Shown in pieces: positions 26,592 through 50,613 of a stretch of 64,000 nt of DNA. A program made the translations under genes and the position numbers. The notes below the pieces were generated by a model. That model was given only the letters and a program-made list of their open reading frames with translations, did not search any database and was not told where the DNA came from. Each line of letters starts with the position of its first letter. Positions within the stretch are counted from its first letter, which is position 1. Source of the DNA: Octopus bimaculoides (Eukaryota); contig NC_069000.1 of assembly GCF_001194135.2 (NCBI RefSeq), forward strand, positions 7,550,885-7,614,884, given 5' to 3'.

Positions 26592-27246
26592 ATGGATACA
26601 AGAATGTTGAGGTAAGTCATTATTATTATTATTATTATTAGGAAAAATTTTCCTTGATATCTGCTACATTTGCACATTATCCACTGGAAGCTACCCAGAT
26701 ACTTAAGGTAGATAATGAATATGATGTTCTTAATACATTGGATGATTATATGAAATTGAGATGTGCTAGGACCCGACAGATTTAAGAAAAAAAACCAGGT
26801 GCACACATGAGCGCATGATAAAAATGCAATGAAGCTTTGAAATTGAAGGTGATAGTGTTCTTCATAAACTGCGCAATTAGGGTTATTCTCTATATTTCTT
26901 TTCAAGTATAATTTTCCTGGTATCATACCTATCAATGTTTCTGTTCCTTTCTTTGTTACCCTGAGTGCCTTATGATTACAGGTGTTGTAATGGTTTCCAT
27001 TTTCAACATTTTGGTGGTCTCTATACCCAGGCATCTGTACCTCTGTATTTTACTGAGCTCTCTGACTGCAACATTTTTATCCGTGGAGACAGTCATATGA
27101 ATTAGGAGATGAGTTTTATCAATATGCTTTTTAACTGTTATATCTAGGTTTATATCTGGTTATATCTGATAGTTAAATATCAGAAGATCGTGATATGACT
27201 AGTCTCAGGTGACTGGTCAGAGATAGTGTTCATATTTTTCTTATCA

Positions 27247-27299
<53 letters not shown>

Positions 27300-27902
27300 G
27301 GTGGTGAGCTGGCAGAGTTGTTAGCGAGCCGGGCGAAATGCTTAGCGGTATTTCATCTGCTGCTATGTTCTGGGTTCAAATTCCGCCGAGGAATTACTTT
27401 CGGGGTCAATGAAATAAGTACCAGTTGAGTACCAGGGTCGATGTGAACAACTGTCCCCCTCTCTAGAAAATCCAGGCCTTGTGTCTGTAGTAGAAAGGAT
27501 TATTATTATTATTATTATCATTATTATTATTGTTACATTTTAAAAAAGGATTGACGTAACTCTTCACAAAGGTAAACAGTCAAGACGAAGACTGCGATTC
27601 GATTGTAATAGATATTTTTATTGGTTGAACGATATTTCAACAGTAAGTCTGTCTTTGTCAAGTTCAAAATAAGAAGTGATAAAAATTCAAAATTATAGAA
27701 ATTTAAAGTATGAATGAGAGCAACCAGCGTCCACACGTTGATGGAATGACATCATCAGTCTTTAAGGTTCAATTTTATAACAGGCGAAAAGAAAAAGACA
27801 GAAAAAAGAAGACAGAACTTGATAAAGACAGATTTACTGCTGAAATATCATTCAACCAATAAAGTATTTATTACAATTGAATCGCGCTCTTCATCTTGAC
27901 TA

Positions 27903-27955
<53 letters not shown>

Positions 27956-30091: not shown

Positions 30092-30172
<81 letters not shown>

Positions 30173-30450
30173 GCTTATATACATATACACATATATAAAT
30201 AACAATTTATGTAAATATATATTTATACAGTCACACACAAACCACATATACACATATGTGGAATAGGTACAATGTATCGAATATTTTTTTTAGTTGTAGT
30301 CTTCCTGATTTTTATTCAGATATAATGAATATATACATGCATACACACATACATCATACATATATACATACATAGATACATAGATACATACATACATGCC
30401 TGCACACACACATATATATAGCTTTTCACTGCACAACCATGCCTGCGCCT

Positions 30451-30500
<50 letters not shown>

Positions 30501-33173
30501 AAAGAGATGACAGAGGATTGATATATGTGGTGCATTGCTGTATTTGAGAAGACCCACCCACCACAACAGAATTGAGATCCTAAAACCTTGGGTCTGTGTA
30601 AAAAGCACTGGTGCTGGTGCCATTTAAAAAGCACCTGTGATGGTGCCACATAGAAAGCATCCAGCATACTTTGTGGAGTGGTTNNNNNNNNNNNNNNNNN
30701 NNNNNNNNNNNNNNNNNNNNNNNNNNNNNNNNNNNNNNNNNNNNNNNNNNNNNNNNNNNNNNNNNNNNNNNNNNNNNNNNNNNNNNNNNNNNNNNNNNNN
30801 NNNNNNNNNNNNNNNNNNNNNNNNNNNNNNNNNNNNNNNNNNNNNNNNNNNNNNNNNNNNNNNNNNNNNNNNNNNNNNNNNNNNNNNNNNNNNNNNNNNN
30901 NNNNNNNNNNNNNNNNNNNNNNNNNNNNNNNNNNNNNNNNNNNNNNNNNNNNNNNNNNNNNNNNNNNNNNNNNNNNNNNNNNNNNNNNNNNNNNNNNNNN
31001 NNNNNNNNNNNNNNNNNNNNNNNNNNNNNNNNNNNNNNNNNNNNNNNNNNNNNNNNNNNNNNNNNNNNNNNNNNNNNNNNNNNNNNNNNNNNNNNNNNNN
31101 NNNNNNNNNNNNNNNNNNNNNNNNNNNNNNNNNNNNNNNNNNNNNNNNNNNNNNNNNNNNNNNNNNNNNNNNNNNNNNNNNNNNNNNNNNNNNNNNNNNN
31201 NNNNNNNNNNNNNNNNNNNNNNNNCATGGAAAGCGGACGTTAAACGATGATGATGATGATGATGATGATGATGATATATATATATATAGATATATATATA
31301 TATAGATATATATATATATATAAGGAGAGAGAGAGATAGACAGCTATCCTATAACAATACTATGAGAATGGTATGTCTATAAAAAAATTAAAGAATCAGG
31401 AAAAACCTAAGAATTTTCCCAACAGCAAAAATATTTTATTTTAAATGAACTAAAAATAGTAACAACAACAGCAACAAGGAAATAAACAAATTTATAAAGA
31501 ATAATAGAATAACAAACAGCATTAAAGTGCAACAATAAGAACAACAAAGGTGAAACAAGATATCACCATCATCATCATCATCATCATTGTTGTTGTTGTC
31601 GTTGTTGTTGTCATCATCGTCGTCATCATCACCACCACCACTACTGTCACCAGTACCACTGCTGCCACTGCCACTACCTCTACCACTGCCACCACCTCTA
31701 CCACAGACACCACCTCTACCACTGCTACCACCTCTACCACTGCCACCACCTTTACCACTGCCACCACTTCTACCACAGCCACCACCTCTACCACTGCCAC
31801 CACCTCTACCACTGCTACCACCTCTACCACTGCCACCACCTTTACCACNNNNNNNNNNNNNNNNNNNNNNNNNNNNNNNNNNNNNNNNNNNNNNNNNNNN
31901 NNNNNNNNNNNNNNNNNNNNNNNNNNNNNNNNNNNNNNNNNNNNNNNNNNNNNNNNNNNNNNNNNNNNNNNNNNNNNNNNNNNNNNNNNNNNNNNNNNNN
32001 NNNNNNNNNNNNNNNNNNNNNNNNNNNNNNNNNNNNNNNNNNNNNNNNNNNNNNNNTACCTCTACCACTGCCACCACCTCTACCACAGACACCACCTCTA
32101 CCACTGCTACCACCTCTACCACTGCAACCACCTCTACCACTGCCACCACCTCTACCACAGCCACCACCTCTACCACTGCAACCACCTCTACCACTGCCAC
32201 CACCTTTACCACTTCCACCACCTCTACCACTGCCACCACTTCTGCACTACCCTACCACCATCATTGCCACTGCTTTCCCCGTTGCTGCCTTTGTCACCAC
32301 TGCCACTACCACCACCAGCAATACCGTTACAATTGAAGAAAACTTGTAAAACCAGTTTAAAGAGTCTATATACATATTTATATATATGCAATGAGCACCT
32401 ATATAAATAAATTTAAGTCGCTGCAGCTTTCCTGTGCCCACCACCACCACCACCACCACCACTTCCACCTCTACCTGTCTACTCATTTCCGCCACTCCTG
32501 GCAACATGTGCACCGACATGTGATTTTGTCAAGCTGGACATAAGATTATGCTCATGTGACTCTGTCTCTTTTCCCATCCATTGTATGTACCCTACCCAAA
32601 TGCCAACCAGCATGTGTACTGGCATGTGATTTGGTGTGGAAACATAACAGATGAGAGTGCTTGACTGATCTGCTTGAAATATCAGTCAAATCTCCCTCTG
32701 TCTCAAGGAACCCAAGACCACTTAACCCCTTTTGATACCAACTCGGCTGAAACCGGCTCTGGCTCTGTAGTACAAATGTCTTGTTTTCATAAGTTTTGAA
32801 TTAAAATCTTCCACCAAACCTTTGTCACAATTTATGTTCCTAACACCAACTTAATGACAACTAAGTTATTTTACTTTGTTATATTCAAAACGAATTGAAA
32901 GAAACGCAGAGCATGTCAAAATAAATACGGTAATTAAAGGGTTAATGGAGTTAAGAGGTCTTGGGTTCCTTGTACATAGGGAAAAACACTTGATAGGCAT
33001 AGGTGGAATGTTTTTGGTCTTAGCTTTGTTTGATCAGGAATGACCTGGGGGCGAAACAACAGCTACAACAACAACTACACATAAATCTGCGTCTGGTGCA
33101 TTTTGTATTTGGTCTATATCCATGTATATCTACTTCATCTATTGCTATATACATACATACGTGCATACATGCA

Positions 33174-33204
<31 letters not shown>

Positions 33205-36200
33205 GTACCTACATACATACATGTTGAGCTGAGGTCAGCAATGCCTGTGCAGAGTTTTAGGTCCAATAAAACTTGCACGACACCTCATAGACCCTCTCCA
33301 CTCTATTGACATAATCTTCGTATCATACAAGGATGGTTGGGAATAACTGGATTGGAGGCAAAGTTGGTGGTGATGAGGTGTCAGAACCATAGGACAAAAA
33401 ACTGAAAATAACAAACTAATTTAATCTTTCTTATATTTTCCAGACTGAAATTATTTGTGTTATTTATAACGGGAACAAGTTACCTTACTCTTGTGTCTGC
33501 CCTGTCAGTTGAAAAGAAATATGTGGACAAGACACTATTACAATCAACAGGGAAGGCTCACAGTGAAATTCAGGAAATCACAACATTACACGAATATGTC
33601 TCCGACCGTGAGTATTTCTTTTAGCTATTTTATATATTTTATATAAACTTTTCTCTTGGTGGTTGGAGAATTGGAAAGGCATTATTTAGAGACAACTTCT
33701 AAGTTCTAACTTCAAATCTTGTTAGAGTCAACTTTACGTATGATCATAATTATTTTATTGACCAACCAAGCACTGTTATTGTTTTAAGCAATTTCTTCAT
33801 TGAAAGGATTGATCCTTTTGGGGTCTATAAGGGTTGATCCTTTCAGGGTCCATAAGGGTTGATCCTTTCAGGATCTATAAGGGTCGATCCTTTTGGGATC
33901 TATAAGAGTTGATCCTTTCAGGGTTTATAAAAGTTGATCCTTTCGGGGTCTATAAGAGTTGATCCTTTTGGGGGTCTATAAAAAAAGGTACCAGTTGAAC
34001 ATTGTAATTGACTTACCCCACCTCCATCAAAATTTTAGGCCTTGTGCCTATAATAGAAAGGATTATCATTTTTATTATTATTATTATTATTATTATTACC
34101 TTCATCATTGTGAAGGGTGTGATGAGAACGGGGAATTTATTTAATTAGTTATCCACTTCCACACAAAGTTCTCTCTCTGGATCTGAAACAAGCCACTATT
34201 GTAATTGAGGTTGTAGCTGATGTTGTTATAGTTGTTGTTGTTGATGTTATTGTTGTTTTTATTGTTATTGTTGTTGTATTGTTGTACAGTGCCATGATTG
34301 GAATTATTCTGCTCCAACTTGGAACACGTAGCTCAGTGTAAGCATTTCATATACCTCCTCTCCCCCATCACTATCACCACTACTACTACTACTACTACCA
34401 CCACCACCACCAAAACCACTAAAACCACCACCACCACCACTAACCACCACTACTACCACCACCATCACCACCACCACCACTAACCACCACCACCACCACC
34501 ACCACCACCACCACCACTACTACTACTACCACCACCACCAACACCACTGTTGCACAACACACTACCACCGACACTAGTACCTATACATCACTGTTTTTCT
34601 ATACGACAGGCTTCAGTGAAATGTCTCTAAAATACCGAGATTCCATGACAGTTCTCTCCAAGAAAGGTTCTGATATTTCAGTGAAAGGGTTGATCTATGC
34701 TGCCACAGTCAGTCAGTTCTACAAGAAGTGAGTATCACCTGTTAGTCTCTGTCTGTCTGTCTGCTTGTTTGTTTGTCTGTCCGTCCATTCGTCCGTCTGA
34801 TTTTTGCCTGTGTCTACTAGATCGTCTGTCTGTCTCTCTGTCTGTATGCATATACGTATGCATGCATGTATGTATTTGTATCTGTCTATCTGTCAGATTG
34901 TCTGTTTGTGCTTGTGTGTCTACTCGCCTGCATGTGTCTATCTAATTGTTTGCCTGTATCTGTTAGATTGTCTACGTGTCTGTGTATCTTTGTATCTGTC
35001 TGTATGTGTGTGTCTGTATCAAATTGTTTGTCTGCCTATCTAGCTTTCAGTGTCTGCCATGTGTCTTTCTGTCTCTCCTTCCTTTCTCCCCCTCCGTCTC
35101 TCATATCCTCCCCTCATTTACTCCAATTCCCATTTCACAAACTTCCTCTCACTTTCTCTTCTTCATTCCTCACACTCTCAATCTTTCTCCTGCACGTCAT
35201 CAAACCAATCATCACTTTCCCATCATCCATCCTCTTCTCACCACCTAACTGGTCACTCCTTAATAATATTCTGTCCAACTTCAGTTTCAGTCGAAATGTT
35301 GCTGAAGAACTGATACGCTTTGTGAGCACTCCAGAGCTTTTGCAATACTCATGTCCTTTCCGTGAAGCAATTACCTGTGACAAGAACTCCATATATCGGA
35401 CAGCTAGTGGTTCCTGCAACAATTTGAATTATCCTTACTGGGGCAAGAGTTACACACCACTGCTACGAATGAGGCCTCCATATTATGAAGATAGTGAGTA
35501 TTAGTAACAAATATGATGATTAGTTGATCTAATTGGATATCTGGAAATTAAAATATCTGGGGATTAAGATATCTGTTGATTAGATTATCTGGATGTTAGG
35601 ATTTTTGGAAATTTAAATTTGGGTGTCTGGATATTAGGTTATTTGTCAAGGGACAAAGATTTTCTAATAGGATAACTGAGGATTAGAGCATCAAAGGATG
35701 AAAACATCTGGAGAATTTGGACATCTGGACGTAAGTGAACCTGAGTATTAAGAACATCTGAGACATAAGTGAACCTGAAGGATTGGGTAATCTTGAGTTC
35801 AGGTAAGCTGAGAATTTAAGAAATCTGGCAAAGGTGCTACACAGTGGGTCTGACCCTGAAACCATGTACTTTGGAAGCAAATTTCTCAACCACAGACCAC
35901 AACCATACATATATTAAAGTGGCTTCTAACATGCATAACGATGAATAAAGATGTTTTAATTAATTAACATCTCAGTCATCGTAAGGAGAAAGAATCCTTA
36001 TGTTAATGACTAATTGATATAATTGTAGCCATAGTGAGAACTAAACATTATGTTAATTCTGGTCAAGAAAGGCAAAGAAGACAACCATAGAAGTTAAAAT
36101 TAATTAAAGTTAATTAAATATAGAATCCAGTCTATGCATGTGTATGTGTGTTCATACAAATGCACATGCATGCACACACACATAAATATATATAAAAAAT

Positions 36201-36630
36201 ACTACACATGAATGCCTCATACTATGAGGGACTCTTAAAGTCAAAATTACCATAATAAATACAGTGTACTGAACACGAGGGAATGCAGCTCATTGAAACT
36301 GACCAGTCAGTACAGGGAATTCTTGATCAGTGTTTTGGGGTGACTATAGTCTCCATCAGTGTATATGTATACAATTATGTACTTTGGCTGCTGCATTAGA
36401 GCATTTTAGCTCTTATTTCTAGCATTCCCTCGCGTTCGGTACACAATATTTCTTATAGTAGTTTTGACTTTACAAGTCCCTCACAGCGTGAGGCATTTAT
36501 GTGTAGTAATGCCCTTCATATAAATAAATATATTTAAAGGGAATGATTATAATTTTTCCCTTATGAGGTTTTTTTTCATGTTGACTACTTGATAAATTCT
36601 TATAAAGATTTCACCCTATCTTTAAATTTT

Positions 36631-36703
<73 letters not shown>

Positions 36704-37712
36704 ATGATGATGATGATATATATATATATATATACATATATATACACCTACCTGTACACACACACACACGTATGTATTGCTACTTTAATATATTTCCTCA
36801 TTTAACAATCTCTCTTTCTTGCTGTCATAGCTGTCTTTACACCCCGTAATATTAGTGTCCAGAACGCTGCATTACCCGGAGCAAGGGATATCAGTGTATA
36901 TTTCCACCAGAAGATAGAAGATCCACTCATGGACCACGACACCACACACCTGGCTGCTGTGTTTGGAGAGTTCCTAATGAGAGACATTGCCTATGTCCCC
37001 ACTATGCAAGGTATGTGGCGAGAAGATATTTCATTGCCCCCTTTCTTTTCACCATTACACCATCACACACACCCAACCAAACACCCCCACACGCACACAC
37101 GAACACATGCACACAAATACACATGTACATACATGCACATACATATACACATACACACATATACAAATATACGCAGACATGTACACACATTCATAGATTT
37201 ACACTCACTCATGTACATATGTATATGGATACCCAATCGCAGCTGTCCCACAAGTAGCACTGTTCTTACCGGCTGTATCCCACCTTACTTCAGTTGCAAT
37301 TAATTATATATCTGATGATGTAGTAACGATGTTAAAAGTCGTAACTGATTCATTTTCTATTTTCTATTTCAGCATCAAGTGGCAAGAGATATGACTGTTG
37401 TAAATTTGGATACATGTAAGTAAAATATACACTTACATACATACATGTAAAAATATACACATTACATTCACACATACATACATGAATGCATTCCTACACA
37501 CATGTGTATAATATGATTTATATTTCGATAGTATCAGTCTCTTGCTACTTTGAGTCTCACTTGTAGATGCACTATACACCTAGAAGTGAAACTCAGAGTA
37601 GCAAGAGACTGGCTTGACCAAAATAGAATCATCATCATCATCATCATTATTATTATATTTTAACATCTGTTTTCCATGATGGTGTTCCAACAGTTATCAC
37701 TAAATATGCATA

Positions 37713-37775
<63 letters not shown>

Positions 37776-39988
37776 TGTGTAATGGGTAAATTGTCGCAGT
37801 TTTGTATTATTAAATTTGTGCATGTGCATTGTTTGTTTTTGATTTTGCTAACTATACAGTATAGTAGGGTCAGTTGGGCACCATCATGTATATTTATGTA
37901 TAATCTTTTTTAGAAATGGCAAATCTTGAAACAAATAAAGCTATAAACAATAGCATGAAAATATTAGGTTGAAAAACCCTTTTAGACAGAGAAAGTTGAA
38001 GGCAGCCTATGGGACTTGAATCCACATCTCCTGTAAACACGACAGGCATTCTGCCATTGGACTTTTTCTATCCAAAGGGGTTTTAATGCAATAATTGCAG
38101 AGGATGTAACTGTATTGAATATATGAATTAGCTTCATAGTATTTTAGCAAACTCACTGTTTAATCTCGATATTTTTATTCCTCAGGTCAGGTCACATGTG
38201 CATGCCCATTCAAATGTGTAAAGTCGACCCCTTCTTTACACCCTACAATAGGAAGTGTTTGTCATTTGCTCGCTCAGCCACATCTCCTCCACTTAATTGC
38301 AAACTTGGTAAGTCTTGTTTTCCTACAAATCTGAAGATCTGTTTTATTCTGAAGTCAACAATTTTTGTAAAACTATAGAAGGATGTCCACATTAGCAAAG
38401 AAAATGTCCAGCTGGTGGTGGTCACCCTGTTGATGACACAAGTCGTTAATGATTAAGGCATACCTCAAATAATTGATAGATTCAGAAGTGAAGTTCAACA
38501 TCCCCAGTTTGATCTGGTAACTTGAGTTGAAGAAGGATGGTCAGTACTGAAGCATCTTTACGGGTCTGTAGGCCCTTTCAGACTGGTTAGAAAGGCAAAG
38601 TCGACCTCAGATGAAAAACCGCTAAGCATTTCGCCTGGCATGCTAACAATTCTGCCATCTCATTGCTCTTCTCCCAGATATAATGGCATCATAACATAAC
38701 TGTATTCTAGTTAATGATGTTGTCATGGTGTTGTAATAGTGTCGTGGGGGTGTTGTAGTGATATTGTAAGGGCTTGGCAGTGGCGTTTCACTACTATCAC
38801 ATTAACACCATCATGTTTTTCTCTTCAAGGTCCCCGAGAACAACTTAACCAAAACACTCACTACATCGATGTCTCACAAATCTATGGCTCAGATGAGGCA
38901 ACCACAAAATCACTGAGGACAATGGTTGCAGGTCAGTTGGTTTTTTTTATTTCTTCCTAATTTACTTCTAGCAGCAGTAGTAGTAGTAGTAGTGAAGGCA
39001 TGTGGCTTAGTGGTAAGGGTATTCAGCTCATGATCATAAGGTCATGGGTTCAATTCCCAGCAATGTGTTGTATCCTTAAGCGAGACACTTTATTTCATGT
39101 TGCTCCAGTCCATTCAGCTGGCAAAAATGAGTAGTACCTGTATTTCAAAGGGCCAGCGATATCACACTCTGTGTCACACTGAATCTCCCTGAGAACTACG
39201 TTAGGGGTACACGTGTCTGTGGAGTGTTCAGCCACTGGAATGTTAATTTCATGAGCAGACTGTTTCATTTACTGGATCAACTGGAACCTTTGCCTTTGTA
39301 ACTGACAAAGTGCCAGTAGGTAGTAGTAGTGGTTGTAGTAGTGGTACAACCACTACTGCTGCTATTACTGCTGTTGTTGTTGATGTAAATATTACAACTA
39401 TTGTTACCACATCCGTAAACACTATTACCATTACCAACACCACCACCACTAATACTATCACTTCCATCACTAACACCCTACCACAATCTCTAATATCCTA
39501 CACCACTAATACCCCCGCCACCACCACCACTAACACACTATCACCACCAATATACCACCACCACCACCACCATTCAAACAAGTCTCTCTCTAATCACCAG
39601 GTAAGATGAAGACCTCTGACATAGGTGATGGAATGATGCCTTTGGATCTGTTCAATGTTGCCAACTGTAAACTGAAGAATGTCAATGGGAATATCACTTA
39701 CTGTTTCACAGGAGGTAAGAACTTTTGTCTTTCTCTAATCATAAGGTCAGAGGTGAAAGGTTGAACATGTTTGAGAAGCATTAATTCAAATGAGACGCTC
39801 TATCCTTGAGTGCTGGGGTCTCCAACCATCAGGTTGTGGGCTAATATTGAGCAGCAGATTATTTGGTCCCAGGACACACAGAAAGAATAAATTTTAAAAT
39901 TTTACTTCTATTTTATTGCCTTCTGTTTTATTGCCTATGTTAATGTCTGTCTGTGTGTATGTGTTTATCTACATATATACATGAATAC

Positions 39989-40021
<33 letters not shown>

Positions 40022-42962
40022 TGCAGACACACATACATTTATATTATGTACCATTTGATTCTGCTTAACTCTTAATTAAATATGTCTCTCTTTCTCTTTT
40101 CTCATCCTTCATTAAGGCGATGATCGTCTGAATGAGAACCCATTGATCTTGTCTCTACATGCTGTATTCCTCCGTGAACACAACCGTATTGCCACACATC
40201 TGTCAAGCATGCACCCAACATGGGATGATGAGAAAATCTTCCAGGAGAGTCGTCGTATTGTTATTGCCGAGATGCAACACATCACATACAATGAGTACTT
40301 GCCATACATTTTAGGTCCACAGCTGATGGCCAAACATGATCTGAATGTCCAAAACAGTGGCTATACAAGCTATGATAGTCAAGTAAGCGCTGGTATATAT
40401 AATGTCTTCTCCGTAGCTGCTGGTCTATATTCCACTTCGATGATAAGATCAAACTTCACCATTGACACCTATCACAAATTGAGTTCTACATTCTTGCGTG
40501 CAGACATGTTCTACCGCAATGAGGATGTTGCTAGTAAAATCATTAAAGGAATGCTCACAGACTCCAGCCAAACAGTTGATCGGTAATTTGACTTAAAACA
40601 TACTCATCAATACCATCATATTTCATAATTGTTGTAGAGGCCACATTTTCTGCAGTTCCTTTTCCCACAAGTCATGCTTTCCACAAACTTCTTTCCCACA
40701 GACTCCTTTTCCACAGACTTCTTTCCCACAGACTCCTTTCCTACATTTTCCGCAGATTGTACATCCTACAATTTCTTTTATCATAGACCACATAGTTCTC
40801 TTCACCATTGGCCATAATTTCCACAGTATCTTTACTGCTGGCCACCTTTCCCACAACCTCACTGGCCACATTTTCCACTGACCCCTTTACCATAAGTCAC
40901 ACTTTCTACAGTTCGCTTTTGCCACAGCTTGGCCATAAATATCACACCTATCTGCACCAACAGAAACTCCATGTGGTTACTCAATTTACAAATCACAGTG
41001 AACATATCAGTTAATAACCCTTTTGTCTATTTTAGATATGTAACAGATGAATTGACCAACAAATACTTAGAAAGTTTTCCTGGAACAGGGATTGATCTCG
41101 CTGCTGATCACATCCAACGAGGACGGGACCATGGTATCATGTCGTACCCAATGTGGACCATCAAGACTGGGGAGCCACGTTGGTCAAATTTCAAATCTTT
41201 GACAAACCATTCGACAGACAATCAAGCCCGCCTTTCACAGATTTATAGGTGAGTTTCATCTTGATTCTTTCCACTGTAGTGGTGGCCTTGGAACAGCAGT
41301 AGCAAAAGGAGTAGTAATAGTAGAAGTAGTAGTACTAATGGTAGGGGTTGTAGAAGTGGTAGTGGTAGGGTAGTATATNNNNNNNNNNNNNNNNNNNNNN
41401 NNNNNNNNNNNNNNNNNNNNNNNNNNNNNNNNNNNNNNNNNNNNNNNNNNNNNNNNNNNNNNNNNNNNNNNNNNNNNNNNNNNNNNNNNNNNNNNNNNNN
41501 NNNNNTATATATATATATACAGGGGGTCCACAAGGTCCAGGTACATGGAGTAAATAAAATCATAACATAGACAATTAAATATAAGAAACAATAATTTCTT
41601 AAAGTATGTGTTAATCCCAATGTACCCAGACTTTGTGGACACCCTGTGTATATATATATATATATATCTGTATATGTATATACATATATCTATATGTACA
41701 CACATACACACACACATATATAATTTATATTTTTGTTTATTCAACAGGAATATCTATGACATTGATTTGTGGACTGCTGGAATTTCTGAGATTCCTGTCT
41801 TAGGTGGGAAAGTTGGTCCCACATTTGGCAACATCATTGCTAAGCAGTTCGAGGTTCTGAAAAATGGAGACCGATTTTGGTATGAAAACAACGACAAGGG
41901 AGCATTTAGCAGAGGTAATTTTTTAATTAATTTCTGTTTTTATAATCATTATCATAATCATCATCGTCATCATTATTGTCATCATCATTATCAACAATAT
42001 CATCATCATCATCATCACTGTTTTAACCTTTGGTGTACATGAAATTCAACATCATCCCAACCCATCACCTGGTGTCATCTCAATAAGGTTTTACACCTTA
42101 ACTGTGTGGCCAGGACAAGGACAAAACTGACCCAAGGGCAAAACAGCCACATGTTCACATGGTTTCAATTTCTATTTCCCCCTGTTGATATGTGAATATA
42201 TATTATTCTCTAAATGTTCCTGCATGATTGTATGCCATACTTTTTGTTGTCATTGCCACTGTGTATTATGTTAGTGATATCTCCCTGTGATGACAGTGTC
42301 TATGATATTCTGAGAGATCACTAATTCTATTTTTCAGTCCAACTCCAGGAAATCAGGAAAGTTTCACTCACGGAAATCTTATGTCGAAACACACGCATAA
42401 CAGAAATTCAGAAGAACAGTTTTGTTGCAGCAAGCGAAAGGTATGTTAGCAACATATTCATCACCATCACCATCAACATCACAATACACATTATTAGCAG
42501 TCTTCTTATCATTGGCAACATTATTATTATGCTGCTTCTGCTGCTGCTGCTGACGATGATAGTGGTGATGGTCATCATCGCTGTCGTCGTCGTCATCACC
42601 ACCATCATTGTTGTCATCATCGTCATCGTAATCATCATCATTTAACATCCTTTTTCCATACTGGCATGGGTTGGAAGGTTTGATAAGAAGAGATGAGGTT
42701 CTATGTCTGTATGATTTCTACAGCTGGACGCCTTTCCTGATGCCAACCACTTAACAGAGTGTACAAGGTGCTTTTCACATGCCACCAGCACTGGTGAGGT
42801 TGCCAAGAACCAGCAAGATAAGAGCCCTCGACTGAGCAGGGTACAGACAGGAGGAATAAGAAACTATGATAGAGGGAGAGCAGCAGGTGTCTTGCTGAAG
42901 AGGTGAATACATGGTTAGCCCACCTGGAAAGCTATATACATAAATATATGTATATGTATATA

Positions 42963-43001
<39 letters not shown>

Positions 43002-43162
43002 AATTAAATAATGAGGGTAGAAATTGATATTAATCAATTAAAACCAGTGGCTTAGCATATTTAAAAAATCCAATTTAAGGCGATTTGACATCTACCGTTA
43101 GCATATTAGGAGTCCACTTTGGTAGTCATTCATCTTAATTTTGTATGTAATATATATACCTA

Positions 43163-43201
<39 letters not shown>

Positions 43202-43760
43202 AGAGAAGTGGGGTAAGAAGATAAGGCAATAATATTTTCATTTACCTTGGTGTAAAGTTTAAATTTAACATTTATGCTTTTTGTCAACATCTCACATCTA
43301 TGTTTAGTGCTTACATTGTGTCTATATTTCACATCTATATTTCATGTCTATAACATGTCTAAAGTTCATACAAAGATAATTAGATAATTAATACCAAACT
43401 GTTTCTTTCTTATTTTTTTTTCTTTTTCATTTACACAGCAACCCATTGGTAAAATGTGGGACCCTGGCAAAAATAGATCTATGCAAATGGGGCCCCCCAA
43501 GTCACTGGCTTGCATGGGGCAGCTGGAGTTTGTGTTACCAAGGGACAAAACTTCGACGGCGCATCTGTCAGAACAACTCAAAGATTGTTTGTCCATGTCA
43601 AGGTTCTTCAATGGAAATCCGTCCATGTCAAAACCGGTATGTACCACCAGTACAGCAAAAACAACATCAACAACCAACACAACAGCCCACAGAAAGAGTT
43701 ATGCAACAAACCACCAAAGTATTCTTATCTCACCGGCCAGCACCTGTGATGGTAGCTTGA
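26592..43760 (+). CDS. Secreted animal heme peroxidase-fold protein (peroxidase-like, catalytic His residues absent) with C-terminal TSP1 repeat, 778 aa
   Basis: Exons 26592-26611, 33444-33607 (signal peptide [26 protein letters not shown]), 34610-34727, 35291-35493 ([17 protein letters not shown]), 36831-37010, 37373-37415, 38186-38307 (CLSFARS), 38830-38931 ([19 protein letters not shown]), 39601-39714, 40117-40582 ([45 protein letters not shown]), 41036-41248 (IQRGRDHG), 41748-41914 ([18 protein letters not shown]), 42338-42440, 43439-43760. Total 2337 nt, no stops, all phases consistent. Confidence 0.93.
27298..27500 (+). mobile_element. SINE family A
   Basis: AAGGTGGTGAGCTGGCAGAG...GGGTTCAAATTCCGCCGAGG...; flanked by (ATT)n. 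Confidence 0.75.
27959..28176 (+). mobile_element. SINE family A
   Basis: Homologous to the 18015 and 27298 copies. Confidence 0.7.
28549..29944 (+). repeat. Local direct duplication of ~300 bp (28549-28845 and 29641-29944)
   Basis: Both begin ACACTGCAAGTGAGAGGTGTAAACTGCTATTTTT and share GGAGTGGTGAGGTGAGGGGTTCATACATCACTTTCAGGGAAAATTCTTCTC. Confidence 0.9.
31660..32240. repeat. 18-bp minisatellite (ACCACCTCTACCACTGCC)n spanning a gap
   Basis: Direct inspection. Confidence 0.9.
32726..32941. mobile_element. piggyBac-type MITE, second family
   Basis: TTAA-CCCCTTTTGATACC...GGTAATTAAAGGG-TTAA; a related fragment lies at ~9860-9963. Confidence 0.65.
33806..33980. repeat. 25-bp minisatellite, 7 copies, derived from a SINE A segment
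   Basis: GATCC recurs at 33811, 33836, 33861, 33886, 33911, 33936 and 33961; followed by the SINE A 3' end. Confidence 0.9.
37535..37611. repeat. 77-nt hairpin (28-bp stem)
   Basis: CAGTCTCTTGCTACTTTGAGTCTCACTT / AAGTGAAACTCAGAGTAGCAAGAGACTG. Confidence 0.85.
38994..39314 (+). mobile_element. SINE family C
   Basis: As for the 9130 copy. Confidence 0.78.
40655..40765. repeat. Degenerate ~15-bp tandem repeat (TTTCCCACAGACTCC)n
   Basis: About 6 copies in peroxidase intron 10. Confidence 0.7.
41520..41646. mobile_element. Short Tc1-type MITE
   Basis: TA-CAGGGGGTCCACAAGGTCCAGGTACAT...ATGTACCCAGACTTTGTGGACACCCTG inverted termini. Confidence 0.7.
43499..43634 (+). other. Thrombospondin type-1 repeat (TSR) domain in the last exon of the peroxidase-like gene
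   Basis: Translation [43 protein letters not shown] contains WxxWxxWxxC, RxRxC and C-x-G...E...C. Domain boundaries approximate. Confidence 0.8.
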
Positions 43761-46539: not shown

Positions 46540-47895
46540 TGCAAAGCCATGACAATATGGTCATGTCAGTTGATATCAGTGGAATCCTCATAAGGGCAAA
46601 TGGAGGATATATTAGTATAGCGATGTAATATTGCATCGAATGTTGAGCAATCGCTTGGAAAAAGTATGGCGAAGTGGAGGACGGAACTGACAGCATATGG
46701 AAGAAGTTTAGGGACAATAGAAATCAGAAGAGGCATCTTCCGAGAGGACTACCTGTTCCCACTGATCTTTGTACCACTAACACTGATTCTGAGGAAAGCA
46801 AAGGCTGGGTATGTATTCAAGAGCCCCCAACAAAAAGTCAACCACTTGTTATTCATGGACGACCTCAAACTTTATGGTAAAGATGAATCCCAAGTCAGTT
46901 CCCTCGCTGATACTGTGTATACTTACAGTGCTGAAATCAGAAAGGAGTTCAAACTGAAAAATGTGGTGTGTTAGTCTTGAAGAGAGGCAAAATCAAATAT
47001 ATGGACGGACTAGCGATACCATTGGGGGAGGTTATGAAGCAGATAGAAGAGACAGGCTGTAAGTACTTGGGGATATTGGAAATGGATAAATTGATGGAGA
47101 AAGAAATGACAGAAAAATTTAAGGTAGAGTACTTGCGCAGACTGAGACTGATCCTTAAGTCGAAATTAAACGGATAGAATAAGATTGAAGCTATCAACAC
47201 CTGGGCGGTTTCACTACTTAGATATGGAGTAGGGGTAATGGCATGGACAGTAGACGAACTAAGCAGCTTAGACAGAAAAACAAGGAAAAAAATGTCACAG
47301 AACTACTTTTATTGGAAGTAAGAAGGTCAGACTTGTGTAGGATGGAAGATTGCAAAGATAAAGCACTGTACAAAGACTTGAGAATGAATGAAACTGAAAA
47401 TAGGTGGATAAAGAAAAAAATGCATAGACAATTTCGTAGGGATGTTGAAGATAAGACAGACAAAGAAAAAAGATGGTTATAGATGACTAAACGTGATTTA
47501 AAACCGGAAACGGAGGCTCCCAATCTGTGCTGCCCAAGAGCAAGCATTAAGAACCAATTGCATCAGAAATTGATAAGTACAGAAGTTGTGGACAAAATGG
47601 CGAAACTGTATGGCATATTACCAGTCAATGTACGCCACTAACCCAGAAAGAATATAAGAGATGTCATCACAATATAGCAAGGATTGTCCATTGGACGCTT
47701 TGCAACAAGTATGGACTTGACAGAGCAAAAGAGTGGTACGAACATAAATCCGAAAGCATCATCGAAAATGATAATGCAAAGATCCTATGGGATTTTATGA
47801 TTCAGTGCGACCATGATATGGGGAATAGGAAACCAGACATAGTGTTAATTGAGAAAGAAAACAAACGATACTGGATCATAGATATAGCATGCCCA
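46540..47895 (+). mobile_element. Decayed Dong/R4-clade non-LTR retrotransposon (RT plus restriction-like endonuclease)
   Basis: IRRGIFREDYLFPLIF, NHLLFMDDLKLYGK, KYLGILE, NRKPDIVLIEK...IIDIACP; many stops and frameshifts. Confidence 0.82.
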
Positions 47896-47896
47896 G

Positions 47897-50613
47897 TGTG
47901 GATTTATCGAAATCGAAGCTCATTAACCGGATCCCTAAGGGAGCTCGGGATAGCTTTACTTGCGTGCTCTCCAGCTTGTTGAAAAACGTATGTTTATCCA
48001 ACAATGCGTCCGACTGGCAGAAACTGTATCTGTTCCTTCGCATCTCTCCCCACGTGCACGATGTGAAATCGGGCTCCCTTACATCTTCTCTCAAGCAACA
48101 GTTCCAGCTATTTGAGTCCACCCCGACCATTTCTCACTTTAATTTGACATCGAACACGGTACCTACCGGTAGGCAACCGATTCGCCTCAAGCGCGCAGTC
48201 AATGCCAAATTCCGTGAATTTGACATAAAACGGGCTGTCCGTCTCCTTTCTTCTCTATCCTCTATCGCTCCGTGTGACTCTGAGTCTCTTAGACGTTTGA
48301 AAGAGAAGCACCCACTGGCACTCCCTGATAATCAACTAAACTGGCCTTAGGCTAGTCTTCACCTCTGATAACAGATGGTTATCAGATGCGGGAATTGTTG
48401 GCCTTTGGCCTTATAGGAAAGTTGGTTTTACATCATTAGATGTATACCTGACTTTCCTATATGAAATTAAGAATATAACGGAACGCTGAACTCCAGACTA
48501 TCAACTTAAACAACATTTATTCAGGTGGTAAATATATACATCTTTAGCTCTTGTTTGTTGTTACAGCTTCCCTGTGTGTGAGCATAGTTGTTGGGACGTT
48601 GTTATGTAGATGTGAGCGAGCTGTCTAGCGTAAGTTCGAAAGATGTAGAAAGACAGCTAAACACGTCTATGCTCATTCGCTGGCCAGCAAGAAAGAGACT
48701 GTCTCCAGAGTTGGAATGTTGGAGACACTGCTTGACACGTCCATGCTCATGGCCGGCCGACCGAGAAAGAGAGAGATCAAAGCGGGAAAGCTTGGTATGT
48801 TGAATCCCACGCATGCGTGAGACTACGCATGCGCCGGCGTTACTACAGCCTCAACATATCAAGGATGGTACCTCCTTGTCGGCCAGTGACGCTGGACTTG
48901 AGCTCTTGGAGAATTTTACTCAGTTTCTGAGCCAGTTCTCTTCAGTGAATGTCCTCCCTTATATCCGCCCACTATTCTTCGGTGTAAAATTATTCGGTTT
49001 CACTAAACCCAACGGAGACCTGCGTCCCATTGCGGTCGGCTGCACCCTTCGCCGTCTCACTGCAAAGGTGTGCTTACAATCGGTCTCTAACTTATTGGAA
49101 GAGGAATTTTCCCCCACCTAGGTAGGAGTGGGCACCAAATTGGGATGTGAAGCTGCTGCCCACGCTACCAGAGTCTATGCCAACTTGCCCTCCTTGTCAT
49201 CCAAGGTCATCTTCAAACTTGACCTTAAGAATGCCTTCAACTCGATCAGCTGCGATGCTGTCTCCAGCTCAGTAAGAGAGAAGGTCCCACAACTGTACCA
49301 CCTTGCATGGCAGGCTTATCGGGAGCCCTCCTATCTCTCTTTCGGTGACCAAATCATCACCTCCACCTCAGGAGTTCAGGAGGGCGACCCACTCGGTTCG
49401 TACTGGGCATTAATGACATCACGAAGATAGGGGTCGAGCTAGACCTCAACGTCTAGTATCTCGACGATGCTTGTTTGGTGGGGTGGGGGACCTCCGGACA
49501 GGGTTCTCGCCATTGCAACAATGGTGGTTGGGGAGCTTGGTCGCCGGGGTCTTCCAGAAAACAGCTCCGAATGTGAGCGCTGGATCCTCAGCCACCCGAC
49601 TCCTCACCATCAACCAACTACTAACTTTTTGTAGAGTCCTTCCCTTCCATTGCAGTCCCTCCCCCATCGGCTTGGTGCTCCCTAGGAGCCCCAATCACTA
49701 ACCTTGCCTTTGAGTCCATCTTCCAGTCGAAGGTGGCTGCCCTTGAGCAATTGCTGAAAAATACTGAAGCTATCGAGCCCCATCAAGGTTTTTTCATACT
49801 GAGGAATTACCTCTCGATCTCTAAGCTTCTATATTTACTCAGAGCCAGCTCATCTTATCGATTCCTATCATGCCTCCAACGCTTGGAGAACCTAATCTTT
49901 GAGAGACTCGAATGCTTAGTCAATGTCAGACTCACTCCAACATCCCGCAATCAGGCTGCATTGCCCAAACGATTTGGAGGTCTTGGTTTTCGTAAGTGTT
50001 CGTCCCTCTTTCTTCTTTGCTTCCTTTCCTCCACCCACGCCTGCTTCACCTGGGTGAGCAACATCCTCTCCTCTCCAACACGGACCAATTCCCACAGGGA
50101 GTTGGATGAAGCTCTCCAACACTGGAGAGAATTGGGCTTGTCTGCTCCTGAGAAGGTGGACGACTGTCGGAGTCAGAGAGCTTGGGACAACATAATTTTG
50201 AAGACCACCTTCGACTCCCTCTTCAGCCAGTCGGACCAGTTTTCAAAGTGCTGCTTACTGTCTCCTAGTGCCAAATACTCAGGTAACTGGATTGATGCCA
50301 TCCCCGTGGCTAATGTTGGTGGCCTACTCAGCTTGGACGAACTTCGTGTCTCCATTGCCCTCAGAGTGGGAGCTGACGTATGCACGTGCTTGATTTGTCG
50401 TTGTGGCAGGCTCATCGACTCCATAGACTTCCACGACCTTTCTTGCCGCCTGAATGCTGGTTGCTTCGCGCGTCATACGGAGTTGAACCTGATACTCAAG
50501 AAGATCTTGGTCCGGGTAAACATCCCCTCCAATTTCGGAACCATCTGGACTGTCCAAAAATGATGGGAAGAGACCTGACGGTCTCATTCTGTGACCCTGG
50601 TCCCACGGCAGAT
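47897..50613 (+). mobile_element. Decayed CRE-clade non-LTR retrotransposon, truncated by a gap
   Basis: RIPKGAR, PQHIKD, LRPIAVGCTLRRLTAK, GTKLGCEAAAH, KLDLKNAFNS, GVQEGDPLG, YLDD, LPKRFGGLG, CRCG...HDLSC...RH zinc knuckle, PDG. Confidence 0.78.
48441..48847 (-). mobile_element. Putative solo LTR (~407 bp) inserted in the CRE element
   Basis: Minus strand starts TGTAGTAAC and ends GGTATACA, with internal TATA-like and AATAAA motifs. It interrupts the CRE frame just before PQHIKD. No clear target-site duplication found. Confidence 0.45.

What the first reader, a model, noticed from the sequence alone, without database searches (positions are those of the whole stretch)
36962..40439. Intact secreted peroxidase-fold gene that has lost both heme histidines: candidate pseudoenzyme
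Seen: a 14-exon, 778-aa uninterrupted ORF with a signal peptide. The distal motif WGQxLDHD reads FGEFLMRD (36962-36985: MPO Q91>E, D94>M, H95>R). The proximal motif AAFRFGHS reads AAGLYSTS (40416-40439: R333>L, H336>T). R239/E242 (GDDRLNE), the Ca-site (D96, THYIDVS), QRGRDHG and many Cys are retained. Known: both His are essential in MPO/LPO/peroxidasin/peroxinectin; His-less precedents are PXDNL and mammalian DUOX peroxidase-homology domains. A-to-I recoding of AGA or ACT cannot restore His. Inference: the fold is kept for a non-catalytic role (matrix scaffold, adhesion, porphyrin/pigment binding or dominant-negative partner).
Basis: partly seen in the sequence, partly recalled or inferred. 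Interest (0 to 1): 0.85.

Follow-up and report, generated by a model that had tools for sequence, protein, structure and literature searches.

The report
Conserved heme-histidine-less octopus peroxidase homologue
An intact, secreted octopus gene with the complete fold of a heme peroxidase has lost both iron-binding histidines; octopuses and cuttlefish have kept it under selection since before they split, so it is most likely a non-enzymatic "dead" peroxidase, wrongly labelled "chorion peroxidase" in databases.

Summary
The window is Octopus bimaculoides chromosome CM046620.1. It carries a 14-exon + strand gene (26592-43760) that encodes exactly XP_014771227.1, named "chorion peroxidase", 780 aa (not 778). 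The protein matches Pfam An_peroxidase end to end (526 bits) and has a C-terminal TSP1 repeat. The AlphaFold model is confident (pLDDT 90.5) and superposes on MPO/LPO (TM 0.88).

Aligned to MPO, the heme site reads Q91E, D94M, H95R, R333L, H336T and N421H. R239, E242, the Ca2+ site and nearly all cysteines are kept.

It is not an artefact or a decaying pseudogene:
- O. sinensis and a gapless O. vulgaris locus carry the same lesions, with all splice sites kept.
- A Sepia esculenta larval mRNA (48% identical; FGEFIARD / AVSRFPAS) and a second decapodiform transcript are orthologues (NJ bootstrap 96%).
- dN/dS is 0.53 between octopuses (P = 2e-4 against neutrality) and about 0.14 between the decapodiforms.
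- Neither locus holds an alternative exon with His motifs.

The orthogroup keeps 99 of 120 columns conserved in canonical peroxidases. The losses cluster on heme-contact residues. The new distal residues (Glu, Arg) are fixed, while the proximal replacements vary.

The best reading is a conserved secreted pseudo-peroxidase. His-less peroxidase homologues already exist (DUOX, several uncharacterised arthropod lineages), so this is a new member of a known kind, of moderate interest.

The parts
26592..26611 (+). Exon 1: start codon, MDTRML + 2 nt; donor GTAAGT
   Evidence: The 14-exon model reproduces P0013 / XP_014771227.1 exactly.
33444..33607 (+). Exon 2. The hydrophobic core of the predicted signal peptide ends at 33501 (VSA|LS); the N-terminal pro-region follows.
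   Evidence: Exon conserved in O. vulgaris at 90% nt identity.
34610..34727 (+). Exon 3 (N-terminal helical region)
35285..35493 (+). Exon 4. The An_peroxidase domain starts at 35394 (residue 138). Contains [17 protein letters not shown].
36831..37010 (+). Exon 5: distal helix. FGEFLMRD lies at 36962-36985: E217 (MPO Q91) 36968-70, M220 (D94) 36977-79, R221 (distal H95) 36980-82, D222 (Ca ligand D96) 36983-85.
37373..37415 (+). Exon 6 ([15 protein letters not shown]), 43 nt; missed in my first model
38186..38307 (+). Exon 7 (SGHMCMPIQ...LNCKLG)
38830..38931 (+). Exon 8: Ca2+-site loop [20 protein letters not shown] (T295, D299, S301 retained)
39601..39714 (+). Exon 9
40117..40582 (+). Exon 10. 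GDDRLNE: R361 (MPO R239) at 40125-27 and E364 (E242) at 40134-36, both retained. Proximal helix AAGLYSTS at 40416-40439, with T464 (proximal H336) at 40434-36 and L461 (R333) at 40425-27.
41036..41248 (+). Exon 11. Y523/L524 (MPO L406/F407) at 41064-69. [13 protein letters not shown] with H538 (MPO N421) at 41109-11. T557 replaces a conserved Cys.
41748..41914 (+). Exon 12 ([11 protein letters not shown]...GDRFWYEN). N612 replaces the partner Cys.
42338..42440 (+). Exon 13. The An_peroxidase domain ends at 42423 (residue 668).
43439..43760 (+). Exon 14. TSP1 repeat at 43500-43634 ([10 protein letters not shown]...), a low-confidence Gln/Pro-rich tail, and stop TGA at 43758-60.
   Evidence: TSP_1 scores 22.9 bits against a cut-off of 21.6 on the isolated C-terminus. 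pLDDT is below 50 for residues 747-780. Coordinates.

Best explanation
This is a real, selectively maintained gene for a secreted protein of about 86 kDa. The protein keeps the whole animal-heme-peroxidase fold plus a C-terminal thrombospondin type-1 repeat, but it can no longer ligate heme iron in the canonical way or run the peroxidase cycle. It is a pseudo-peroxidase.

Shown:
- The distal catalytic His is Arg, the proximal iron ligand His is Thr, its H-bond partner Asn421 is gone, and distal Gln is Glu.
- The same state is present in three Octopus species, in a cuttlefish and, for the part its partial transcript covers (the distal motif is not covered), in a second decapodiform.
- The loss therefore predates the octopus/decapodiform split.
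- The gene has since evolved under purifying selection, with the Ca2+ site, disulfides and helical core intact.

Inferred:
- The former distal heme cavity was remodelled rather than left to decay. Glu217, Arg221, Tyr225, Val226, Met229, Leu362, Tyr523 and Leu524 are fixed across the orthogroup. Glu217 and Arg221 are i/i+4 on the distal helix and sit opposite the retained Arg361/Glu364, which suggests a salt-bridge plug or a new polar binding site.
- The proximal side is merely relaxed: Thr/Ala, Ser/Pro, Leu/Gln/Arg and His/Leu/Phe/Tyr at the former ligand positions.
- The protein works extracellularly as a non-catalytic binding or scaffold protein. The TSP1 repeat would tether it to matrix or cell-surface glycoconjugates, and the dead peroxidase domain would bind a partner or ligand, possibly one shared with the catalytically active cephalopod paralogues (ink-gland melanogenic peroxidase, light-organ halide peroxidase).
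For: - Exact gene model and identity to XP_014771227.1.
- Full-length An_peroxidase match, 1-530 of 530 profile positions, 526 bits.
- Residue-by-residue MPO alignment.
- AF2 model with pLDDT 90.5 and pTM 0.89, and Foldseek TM 0.88 to MPO/LPO.
- Orthologues with the same lesions: O. sinensis P0133, the O. vulgaris locus L001 (all 13 compared exons intact, GT-AG kept, no N), Sepia esculenta P0015 (mRNA from larval RNA-seq run SRR19578103) and P0281.
- An NJ tree puts the octopus and Sepia proteins together at 96% bootstrap, inside a cephalopod-only clade at 95%.
- dN/dS is 0.53 over the whole gene and 0.46 over the peroxidase domain between O. bimaculoides and O. vulgaris (bootstrap CIs exclude 1; Fisher P 2e-4 and 5.5e-4). 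For Sepia against P0281, dN is 0.17, dS 1.22 and omega about 0.14.
- 99 of 120 canonical conserved columns are kept; the losses shared by all three proteins are mostly Q91, H95, G335, H336, L406, F407 and N421.
- 8 of 13 orthogroup signature residues lie in these distal elements (residues 217-229, 362, 523-524).
- No conserved alternative ligand: position 538 is H, L, F or Y and position 462 is Y or F.
- No alternative exons.
Against: - No biochemical data exist. Absence of heme binding and of activity is inferred from sequence only.
- Expression of the O. bimaculoides gene itself was not verified here. The model is a RefSeq prediction, and mRNA evidence exists only for the decapodiform orthologues.
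- Omega of about 0.5 between octopuses is relaxed compared with typical enzymes, so part of the protein may be under weak constraint.
- R239 and E242 equivalents and the GDDRLNE motif are perfectly conserved in the orthogroup, which could hint at residual pocket chemistry.
- The active cephalopod paralogues already have an unorthodox heme pocket (no ester-bond residues, no Gln91, no Asn421). Rules derived from MPO may therefore transfer imperfectly to this clade.
- The orthologue was not among the 361 proteins of the O. vulgaris ink proteome, and no tissue of action is known.
Confidence: 0.72

Rival explanations
1. The protein is still a heme protein or enzyme with rewired ligation. A new ligand set (for example Tyr523 or Tyr462 as a tyrosinate ligand, with Glu217/Arg221 as the acid-base pair, by analogy with catalase Tyr or chloroperoxidase Glu) would support peroxidase, catalase-like or other heme chemistry.
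For: - Glu217, Arg221, Tyr523 and Leu524 are invariant in octopus and Sepia and essentially absent from canonical peroxidases.
- Arg361 and Glu364 (MPO R239/E242) are retained.
- The active paralogues in the same clade already use an atypical pocket.
Against: - No candidate proximal ligand is conserved. Position 464 is Thr or Ala, 462 is Tyr or Phe, and 538 is His, Leu, Phe or Tyr.
- Asn421 and Gly335 are lost together with His336, as in the other His-less lineages.
- By established knowledge of MPO, L406/F407 lie on the distal side. A distal Tyr with no proximal ligand has no precedent in this superfamily.
Confidence: 0.1
2. The remodelled cavity is a new cofactor-independent ligand-binding or catalytic site, for example for melanin precursors, a lipid or a microbial molecule. 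The protein would then be neofunctionalised rather than a passive scaffold.
For: - Conserved substitutions cluster around the former distal pocket, while the proximal side drifts.
- Selection is strong in decapodiforms, with omega about 0.14.
- Heme ligands were lost repeatedly in the sister lineages P0021 and P0020/P0159.
Against: - This is purely sequence inference.
- No ligand is suggested by any search.
Confidence: 0.13
3. The gene is a recently inactivated pseudogene, or an assembly or annotation artefact in which the real transcript uses other exons or the codons are mis-assembled.
For: - The window has N gaps inside introns 1 and 11.
- The O. vulgaris annotation splits the gene into two models.
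- Omega of 0.5 is fairly high.
Against: - The ORF is intact, with conserved splice sites, in three Octopus genomes. The O. vulgaris locus is gapless and has no extra peroxidase exon.
- Full-length mRNAs with UTRs exist in Sepia esculenta.
- Omega is significantly below 1 in two independent lineage pairs.
- The lesion is shared across a split conventionally dated at more than 250 Myr (that date is from my own knowledge).
Confidence: 0.03

Closest known systems
Cephalopod melanogenic / halide peroxidases: Sepia officinalis ink-gland peroxidase O18504 and Euprymna scolopes light-organ peroxidase Q24926
   Same: - Same cephalopod-specific clade (95% bootstrap).
- 41-43% identity.
- Same architecture: signal peptide, N-terminal region, An_peroxidase domain and a C-terminal TSP1-like W..W..W..C repeat.
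- Shared departures from MPO at Q91, G335 and N421.
   Different: - The active paralogues keep both histidines (FGVF[LF]NHD, AGIIYSHS). The window protein has Arg and Thr there.
- They lack E242 (Val), whereas this protein keeps it.
DUOX peroxidase-homology domain
   Same: It has the peroxidase fold without the distal and proximal histidines. This is stated for Drosophila Duox in PMC4654585. DUOX1 structures are recovered by both the sequence and the fold searches.
   Different: - DUOX carries the domain as the ectodomain of a membrane NADPH oxidase. This protein is free and secreted, with a TSP1 repeat.
- Identity is only about 24% and the loss was independent.
Human PXDNL (peroxidasin-like)
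   Same: It is a secreted paralogue of an active animal heme peroxidase that lacks peroxidase activity and is presumed to act through other domains (PMC8533639).
   Different: - PXDNL's reported lesions are Gln->Trp and Asp->Glu, not the histidines.
- It has LRR, Ig and VWC domains.
- It is restricted to vertebrates.
Uncharacterised His-less invertebrate An_peroxidase homologues (mite P0072; braconid wasps P0123/P0130; aculeate P0101/P0132; cephalopod P0020/P0159 and P0021)
   Same: They show full-length PF03098 homology with one or both heme histidines replaced, and Asn421 is lost wherever the proximal His is lost.
   Different: - The losses are independent and the replacement residues differ.
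- No named member outside molluscs was seen to combine the peroxidase domain with TSP1.
- None was found described in the searchable literature.
Insect chorion peroxidase (Pxt/Pxd), the source of the database name
   Same: It belongs to the same Pfam family, at roughly 33-36% identity.
   Different: - The insect enzymes are active heme peroxidases that cross-link the chorion. The name was transferred here by similarity only.
- The 'chorion peroxidase' studied in the O. maya oviducal gland is a different gene: its qPCR primers do not match the window.

Membership tests
Animal heme peroxidase fold (Pfam PF03098, peroxidase-cyclooxygenase superfamily) | Full-length sequence homology to the family profile | tested here: met
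   An_peroxidase covers 1-530 of 530 profile positions, 526 bits, E 1e-157. Best PDB match is MPO at E 8e-76.
Animal heme peroxidase fold (Pfam PF03098, peroxidase-cyclooxygenase superfamily) | Predicted 3D fold superposes on solved members | tested here: met
   AF2 model pLDDT 90.5, pTM 0.89. Foldseek TM 0.86-0.89 (normalised by target) to MPO/LPO, E about 1e-41.
Animal heme peroxidase fold (Pfam PF03098, peroxidase-cyclooxygenase superfamily) | Ca2+-binding loop (MPO D96, T168, D172, S174) and conserved disulfide cysteines | tested here: met
   D222, T295, D299 and S301 are retained, as are all conserved Cys columns except one pair (T557/N612), which is lost only in octopus.
Catalytically competent heme peroxidase (MPO/LPO/peroxidasin/chorion peroxidase type) | Distal catalytic His (MPO H95) | tested here: not met
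   It is Arg221 (AGA, 36980-82). Arg also occupies this position in O. sinensis, O. vulgaris and Sepia.
Catalytically competent heme peroxidase (MPO/LPO/peroxidasin/chorion peroxidase type) | Proximal iron-ligand His (MPO H336) with its H-bond partner Asn421 | tested here: not met
   The His is Thr464 (ACT, 40434-36), and Ala in the decapodiforms. Asn421 is replaced by His, Leu, Phe or Tyr.
Catalytically competent heme peroxidase (MPO/LPO/peroxidasin/chorion peroxidase type) | Distal Gln91 and Arg239 | tested here: inconclusive
   Gln91 is replaced by Glu217 (lost), while Arg239 is retained as Arg361.
Catalytically competent heme peroxidase (MPO/LPO/peroxidasin/chorion peroxidase type) | Ester-bond residues Asp94 and Glu242 for covalent heme | tested here: inconclusive
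   Asp94 is Met220 (Ala in Sepia), while Glu242 is retained as Glu364. The active cephalopod paralogues lack both, so this feature is not decisive in this clade.
Catalytically competent heme peroxidase (MPO/LPO/peroxidasin/chorion peroxidase type) | Heme binding and H2O2-dependent substrate oxidation | not testable with these tools
   This needs recombinant protein, spectroscopy and activity assays.
Pseudoenzyme (dead homologue maintained by selection) | Catalytic residues lost while the ORF stays intact in orthologues of distant lineages | tested here: met
   Three Octopus species, Sepia esculenta and, for the proximal site only, a second decapodiform share the state. The orthogroup has 96% bootstrap support.
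Pseudoenzyme (dead homologue maintained by selection) | Purifying selection (dN/dS < 1) | tested here: met
   Omega is 0.53 (CI 0.40-0.76; Fisher P 2e-4) for the octopus pair and about 0.14 for the decapodiform pair, where dS is near saturation.
Pseudoenzyme (dead homologue maintained by selection) | Expression as mRNA or protein | tested here: inconclusive
   Full-length transcripts with UTRs occur in Sepia esculenta larval RNA-seq and in a second decapodiform. O. bimaculoides expression was not checked, and the orthologue was not detected in the O. vulgaris ink proteome.
Thrombospondin type-1 repeat proteins | TSP_1 profile match at or above the gathering score | tested here: met
   22.9 bits against a cut-off of 21.6 on the isolated C-terminus, but 19.5 bits in the full-length scan, so the match is marginal. 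Sepia scores 21.6 and paralogue P0027 22.8.
Peroxinectin (cell-adhesive peroxidase) | Integrin-binding KGD/RGD motif together with an active heme site | tested here: not met
   There is no RGD or KGD in the O. bimaculoides or Sepia proteins. A single KGD in O. sinensis is not conserved, and the heme site is lost.
Peroxidasin / PXDNL | LRR + Ig + peroxidase + VWC domain architecture | tested here: not met
   Pfam finds only An_peroxidase and TSP_1.

The most novel reading that the evidence does not exclude
The cephalopod-specific peroxidase-TSP1 clade has shed heme ligands in at least three patterns: distal only in Sepia P0021, proximal only in P0020/P0159, and both in this orthogroup. In this orthogroup the replacement distal residues (Glu217, Arg221, Tyr523, Leu524 and others) have been fixed since before octopus and cuttlefish diverged. 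The most novel reading not excluded is that the fold carries a second, heme-independent activity: a conserved ligand- or partner-binding site built in the old distal cavity. Such a site might bind melanin or ommochrome precursors, matrix or microbial ligands, or might regulate the active ink-gland and light-organ peroxidases. The heme chemistry became dispensable more than once because that second function is the selected one.
Probability: 0.18. Interest if true: 0.65.

Novelty: new member of a known kind. Interest (0 to 1): 0.42.

Why it matters
1. Annotation. RefSeq and UniProt call this protein and its orthologues "chorion peroxidase(-like)". Gene-family counts of cephalopod "heme peroxidases", such as the expansions discussed for the squid light organ (PMC6386654), and transcriptome interpretations that treat such hits as enzymes, would mis-assign it.

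2. Biology. It is a clean natural experiment. A dead, free-standing peroxidase has been kept for a very long time next to active paralogues with known roles (ink melanogenesis, symbiont control). It can show what the peroxidase fold does when heme chemistry is removed.

3. Practical use. It supplies a short list of residues for reversion and ablation experiments: E217, R221, T464, Y523, L524 and H538.

It does not open a new category. His-less peroxidase domains are known (DUOX), and several uncharacterised invertebrate lineages show the same kind of loss.

Tried and rejected
- My first hand-built 13-exon model had a wrong exon 1 (ATG at 33241, weak donor) and lacked the 43-nt exon 6. It was replaced once P0013 was available. 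A search for a spliced 14th exon downstream of the TSP1 exon found nothing credible. The true last exon simply reads through to the stop at 43758-60.
- His538 (at the Asn421 position) as a relocated proximal ligand was rejected. The position is Leu in O. sinensis and O. vulgaris, and Phe, Leu or Tyr in the decapodiforms.
- Tyr462 as a ligand was rejected. MPO also has Tyr there, and Sepia has Phe.
- Adhesion through RGD or KGD is not supported, because no such motif is conserved.
- A link to the O. maya oviducal-gland "chorion peroxidase" was rejected because its qPCR primers have no match in the window within 3 mismatches.
- A link to the octopus ink proteome was rejected. The detected "chorion peroxidase-like" protein, A0A7E6FFI6 (peptides QWCGLSFPR and DCLPFTR), is the canonical paralogue of the P0027 type, and this gene's orthologue accessions are absent.
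- Literature searches for described His-less or pseudo-peroxidases in cephalopods or invertebrates returned nothing specific.
- Species identity could not be obtained for SRA runs SRR27666077/79, SRR29271465/77 and SRR25158143/53. Weis et al. 1996 (PMC19390) is not held in the library.
- The chromosome-level O. bimaculoides record is identical to the window, so it gives no independent check of the codons. Independence comes from the other species.

Full report
**What is there**

The window is eukaryotic, AT-rich and rich in microsatellites, with N gaps. It is identical over 19,169 bases to Octopus bimaculoides assembly GCA_001194135.2, chromosome CM046620.1, positions 7,576,476-7,595,644.

36962-36985 encodes FGEFLMRD and 40416-40439 encodes AAGLYSTS.

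I rebuilt the gene by hand from stop-free segments and splice sites. That first model used a wrong first exon and missed a 43-nt exon. A protein search returned XP_014771227.1 / A0A0L8HLX2, "chorion peroxidase [Octopus bimaculoides]", 780 aa.

The corrected 14-exon model has these exons:
- 26592-26611
- 33444-33607
- 34610-34727
- 35285-35493
- 36831-37010
- 37373-37415
- 38186-38307
- 38830-38931
- 39601-39714
- 40117-40582
- 41036-41248
- 41748-41914
- 42338-42440
- 43439-43760

It has AG/GT at every junction and reproduces that protein exactly. The N gaps (30684-31224, 31849-32056, 41379-41505) lie in introns.

**Fold and domains**

- Pfam An_peroxidase matches end to end (profile 1-530 of 530, 526 bits, E 1e-157).
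- A C-terminal thrombospondin type-1 repeat scores 19.5 bits in the full-length scan and 22.9 bits (cut-off 21.6) on the isolated C-terminus.
- The N-terminus, [26 protein letters not shown]|LS, has the shape of a signal peptide by hydropathy and the -3/-1 rule. No dedicated predictor was available.
- An AlphaFold2 model built on a 122-sequence alignment has mean pLDDT 90.5 and pTM 0.89. Only the Gln/Pro-rich tail (residues 747-780) is disordered.
- Foldseek places the model on myeloperoxidase and lactoperoxidase with TM 0.86-0.89 (normalised by target) and E about 1e-41.

**The active site**

The phmmer alignment to human MPO (5mfa, E 8e-76) gives the following:

| MPO motif | Window motif | Changes |
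|---|---|---|
| WGQLLDHD | FGEFLMRD | Q91E, D94M, H95R; Ca ligand D96 kept |
| GDTRSSE | GDDRLNE | R239 and E242 kept |
| AFRYGHT | AAGLYSTS | R333L, G335S, H336T |

I then audited 120 alignment columns that are at least 85% conserved in 198 homologues carrying both histidines.
- The octopus and cuttlefish proteins keep 99 of the 120 columns.
- Ten columns are changed in all three proteins. Seven of them are the equivalents of Q91, H95, G335, H336, L406, F407 and N421. The other three are G171, A357 and N390.
- The Ca2+ loop (T295, D299, S301), R239, the RGRDHG motif and all conserved cysteines are kept, apart from one pair.
- That pair (T557 and N/K612) is lost jointly in octopus only.

This pattern is a targeted loss of heme-contact residues on an otherwise conserved scaffold. 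It is not general decay.

**Artefact, pseudogene or real gene?**

- *Independent assemblies.* O. sinensis XP_029647729.2 (773 aa) reads [16 protein letters not shown] and [13 protein letters not shown]. In the O. vulgaris chromosome assembly, exons 2-14 lie in the same order at 89-97% nucleotide identity. Every acceptor and donor is conserved, the ORF is uninterrupted over 770 aa, and the locus contains no N.
- *Alternative exons.* tblastn with seven paralogues finds each peroxidase exon once in the window and once in the O. vulgaris locus. No reading frame in either encodes a G[QE]x[LIVMF]xHD-type or [FY]R[FYILM][GAST]H[ST]-type motif.
- *Selection between octopuses.* Nei-Gojobori analysis of O. 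bimaculoides against O. vulgaris gives dS 0.128 and dN 0.068, so omega is 0.53 (bootstrap 95% CI 0.40-0.76). For the peroxidase domain omega is 0.46 (CI 0.29-0.70). Fisher tests of nonsynonymous against synonymous proportions give P = 2e-4 and 5.5e-4. Alignable intron sequence is 82-92% identical, consistent with dS.
- *Orthologues outside Octopus.* The best non-octopus relative, P0015 (804 aa, 48% identity), is assembled as full-length mRNA with UTRs from two RNA-seq runs. One of them, SRR19578103, is cited in papers on Sepia esculenta larvae. P0015 reads FGEFIARD, GGDDRLNE, AVSRFPAS and [13 protein letters not shown], so it also has no histidines. The hit is reciprocal.
- *Phylogeny.* A neighbour-joining tree on 516 columns groups the octopus proteins with P0015 at 96% bootstrap. 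That group sits inside a cephalopod-only clade at 95%.
- *A second decapodiform.* An exhaustive representative search added P0281, a partial transcript from another run. It is 71% identical to the Sepia protein, shares its C-terminal extension and reads AAGRFPAS. Over 430 codons, Sepia against P0281 gives dN 0.17, dS 1.22 (near saturation) and omega about 0.14.

The double loss therefore predates the octopus/decapodiform split. That split is conventionally placed more than 250 Myr ago, a date taken from my own knowledge rather than tested here. The gene has been under purifying selection in both lineages since then.

**Remodelled or just broken?**

Thirteen positions are invariant in octopus and Sepia (and in P0281 where it is covered) yet occur in no more than 3% of canonical homologues. 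They are E217, R221, Y225, V226, M229, L362, L369, Y523, L524, P551, M552, S567 and C689.

Eight of the thirteen lie in elements that line the distal cavity. These are the distal helix and the loop after it (217-229), the residue next to R239 (L362), and the L406/F407 equivalents (Y523, L524).

The replacements on the proximal side are not conserved. The His336 position is T or A, Gly335 is S or P, Arg333 is L, Q or R, and Asn421 is H, L, F or Y. This argues against any conserved substitute iron ligand, and in particular against His538 or Tyr462 in that role. It suggests that the distal face acquired a new, constrained configuration.

Glu217 and Arg221 are spaced i/i+4 on the distal helix and face the retained Arg361/Glu364. 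A salt-bridge network that fills or re-purposes the cavity is a reasonable inference. I could not inspect model coordinates to test it.

**Family context**

The clade contains the biochemically known cephalopod enzymes: the Sepia officinalis ink-gland "melanogenic peroxidase" O18504 and the Euprymna scolopes light-organ peroxidase Q24926.
- Both keep the two histidines (FGVF[LF]NHD, AGIIYSHS).
- Both already lack Q91, D94, E242, G335 and N421.
- Other decapodiform members have lost only the distal His (P0021, whose cluster contains a Sepia pharaonis fragment: FGLFLSTD).
- Others have lost only the proximal His (P0020 and P0159: VMDMT[LI]AT). These share Tyr523 with the window's orthogroup and are its sister group at 69% bootstrap.
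- All these members carry the C-terminal W..W..W..C repeat.

Expansion of heme peroxidases in cephalopods has been described (PMC6386654). I found no mention of histidine-less members there.

Outside cephalopods, loss of both histidines occurs in a mite protein (P0072) and two braconid wasp proteins (P0123, P0130). Loss of the proximal His alone occurs in several insect lineages and in domains of multi-domain proteins. In almost every case Asn421 is gone too. Dead peroxidase domains are therefore recurrent, though essentially uncharacterised.

**Comparison with known cases**

- The Drosophila DUOX peroxidase-homology domain lacks the proximal and distal histidines (PMC4654585). It is the nearest described analogue in kind, but it is the ectodomain of a membrane oxidase.
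- PXDNL is inactive because of Gln->Trp and Asp->Glu changes (PMC8533639).
- The protein is not a peroxidasin (no LRR, Ig or VWC domains).
- It is not peroxinectin-like in its adhesion motif (no conserved RGD or KGD).
- The database name "chorion peroxidase" is a similarity label. The gene of that name studied in the O. maya oviducal gland is a different gene.
- The "chorion peroxidase-like" protein found in O. vulgaris ink is the canonical paralogue A0A7E6FFI6, not this one.

**Verdict**

*Shown:*
- an intact gene and fold;
- both heme histidines and their partner residues lost;
- the lesion shared by octopus and cuttlefish orthologues;
- purifying selection in both lineages;
- no alternative exons.

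*Inferred:*
- no heme ligation and no peroxidase activity;
- secretion;
- an extracellular non-catalytic binding or scaffold role, with the TSP1 repeat as a tether.

*Unknown:* tissue, partner and ligand.

I rate it a new member of a known kind, namely catalytically dead animal-peroxidase homologues, and of moderate interest. Its value lies in correcting the annotation and in offering a well-defined system next to active paralogues. It is not a new principle.

Noticed in passing
window 24489-25365 (-) and about 20766-21339 (+): Tc1/mariner transposase remnants lie just upstream of exon 1 (HTH_Tnp_Tc3_2 52 bits; DDE_3 24.9 bits, below its cut-off). The minus-strand copy is interrupted by a 10-N gap at 24977-24986.
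   Followed up: partly
window 46621-50560 (+): A run of long ORFs with a reverse-transcriptase-like FMDDLKL motif lies about 3 kb downstream of the gene. It is probably a non-LTR retroelement, but no Pfam hit reached E <= 0.01.
   Followed up: partly
window 56093-56446 (+) and 60072-60494 (+): There is an immunoglobulin I-set exon (25 bits, above its cut-off) and a second Ig-like ORF. Together they indicate a downstream Ig-superfamily gene on the same strand.
   Followed up: partly
P0021 (loci L007/L008); P0020 (L005); P0159 (L006): Paralogues in the same cephalopod clade have lost heme ligands in other combinations. P0021 has lost the distal His only (FGLFLSTD with AGVFHSHS). P0020 and P0159 have lost the proximal His only (FG[NI]FLNHD with VMDMT[LI]AT). 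All three are assembled as full-length mRNAs.
   Followed up: partly
P0151 (Sepia officinalis O18504) and P0017 (Euprymna scolopes Q24926): The cephalopod peroxidases known as enzymes lack both residues that form the covalent heme ester bonds in MPO/LPO (D94->N, E242->V). They also lack Gln91 and Asn421. Their heme environment is therefore unorthodox even where activity is documented.
   Followed up: no
window 41166-41168 (T557) and 41830-41832 (N612): A cysteine pair conserved in 97-98% of canonical homologues, and in the Sepia orthologue, has been lost jointly in the Octopus lineage (T557; N or K at 612). This looks like the coordinated loss of one disulfide.
   Followed up: partly
L001 (O. 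vulgaris OX597833.1, 60115241-60148695): The O. vulgaris annotation splits the orthologue into two gene models (412 aa and 182 aa, with an 88-aa minus-strand call between them). The exons in fact form one intact 770-aa ORF that is colinear with the O. bimaculoides gene.
   Followed up: yes
window 35285 / 35291: Exon 4 has two in-frame acceptors 6 nt apart (ttcag|tttcag|). The RefSeq model uses the upstream one. Using the downstream one would delete Phe-Ser.
   Followed up: no
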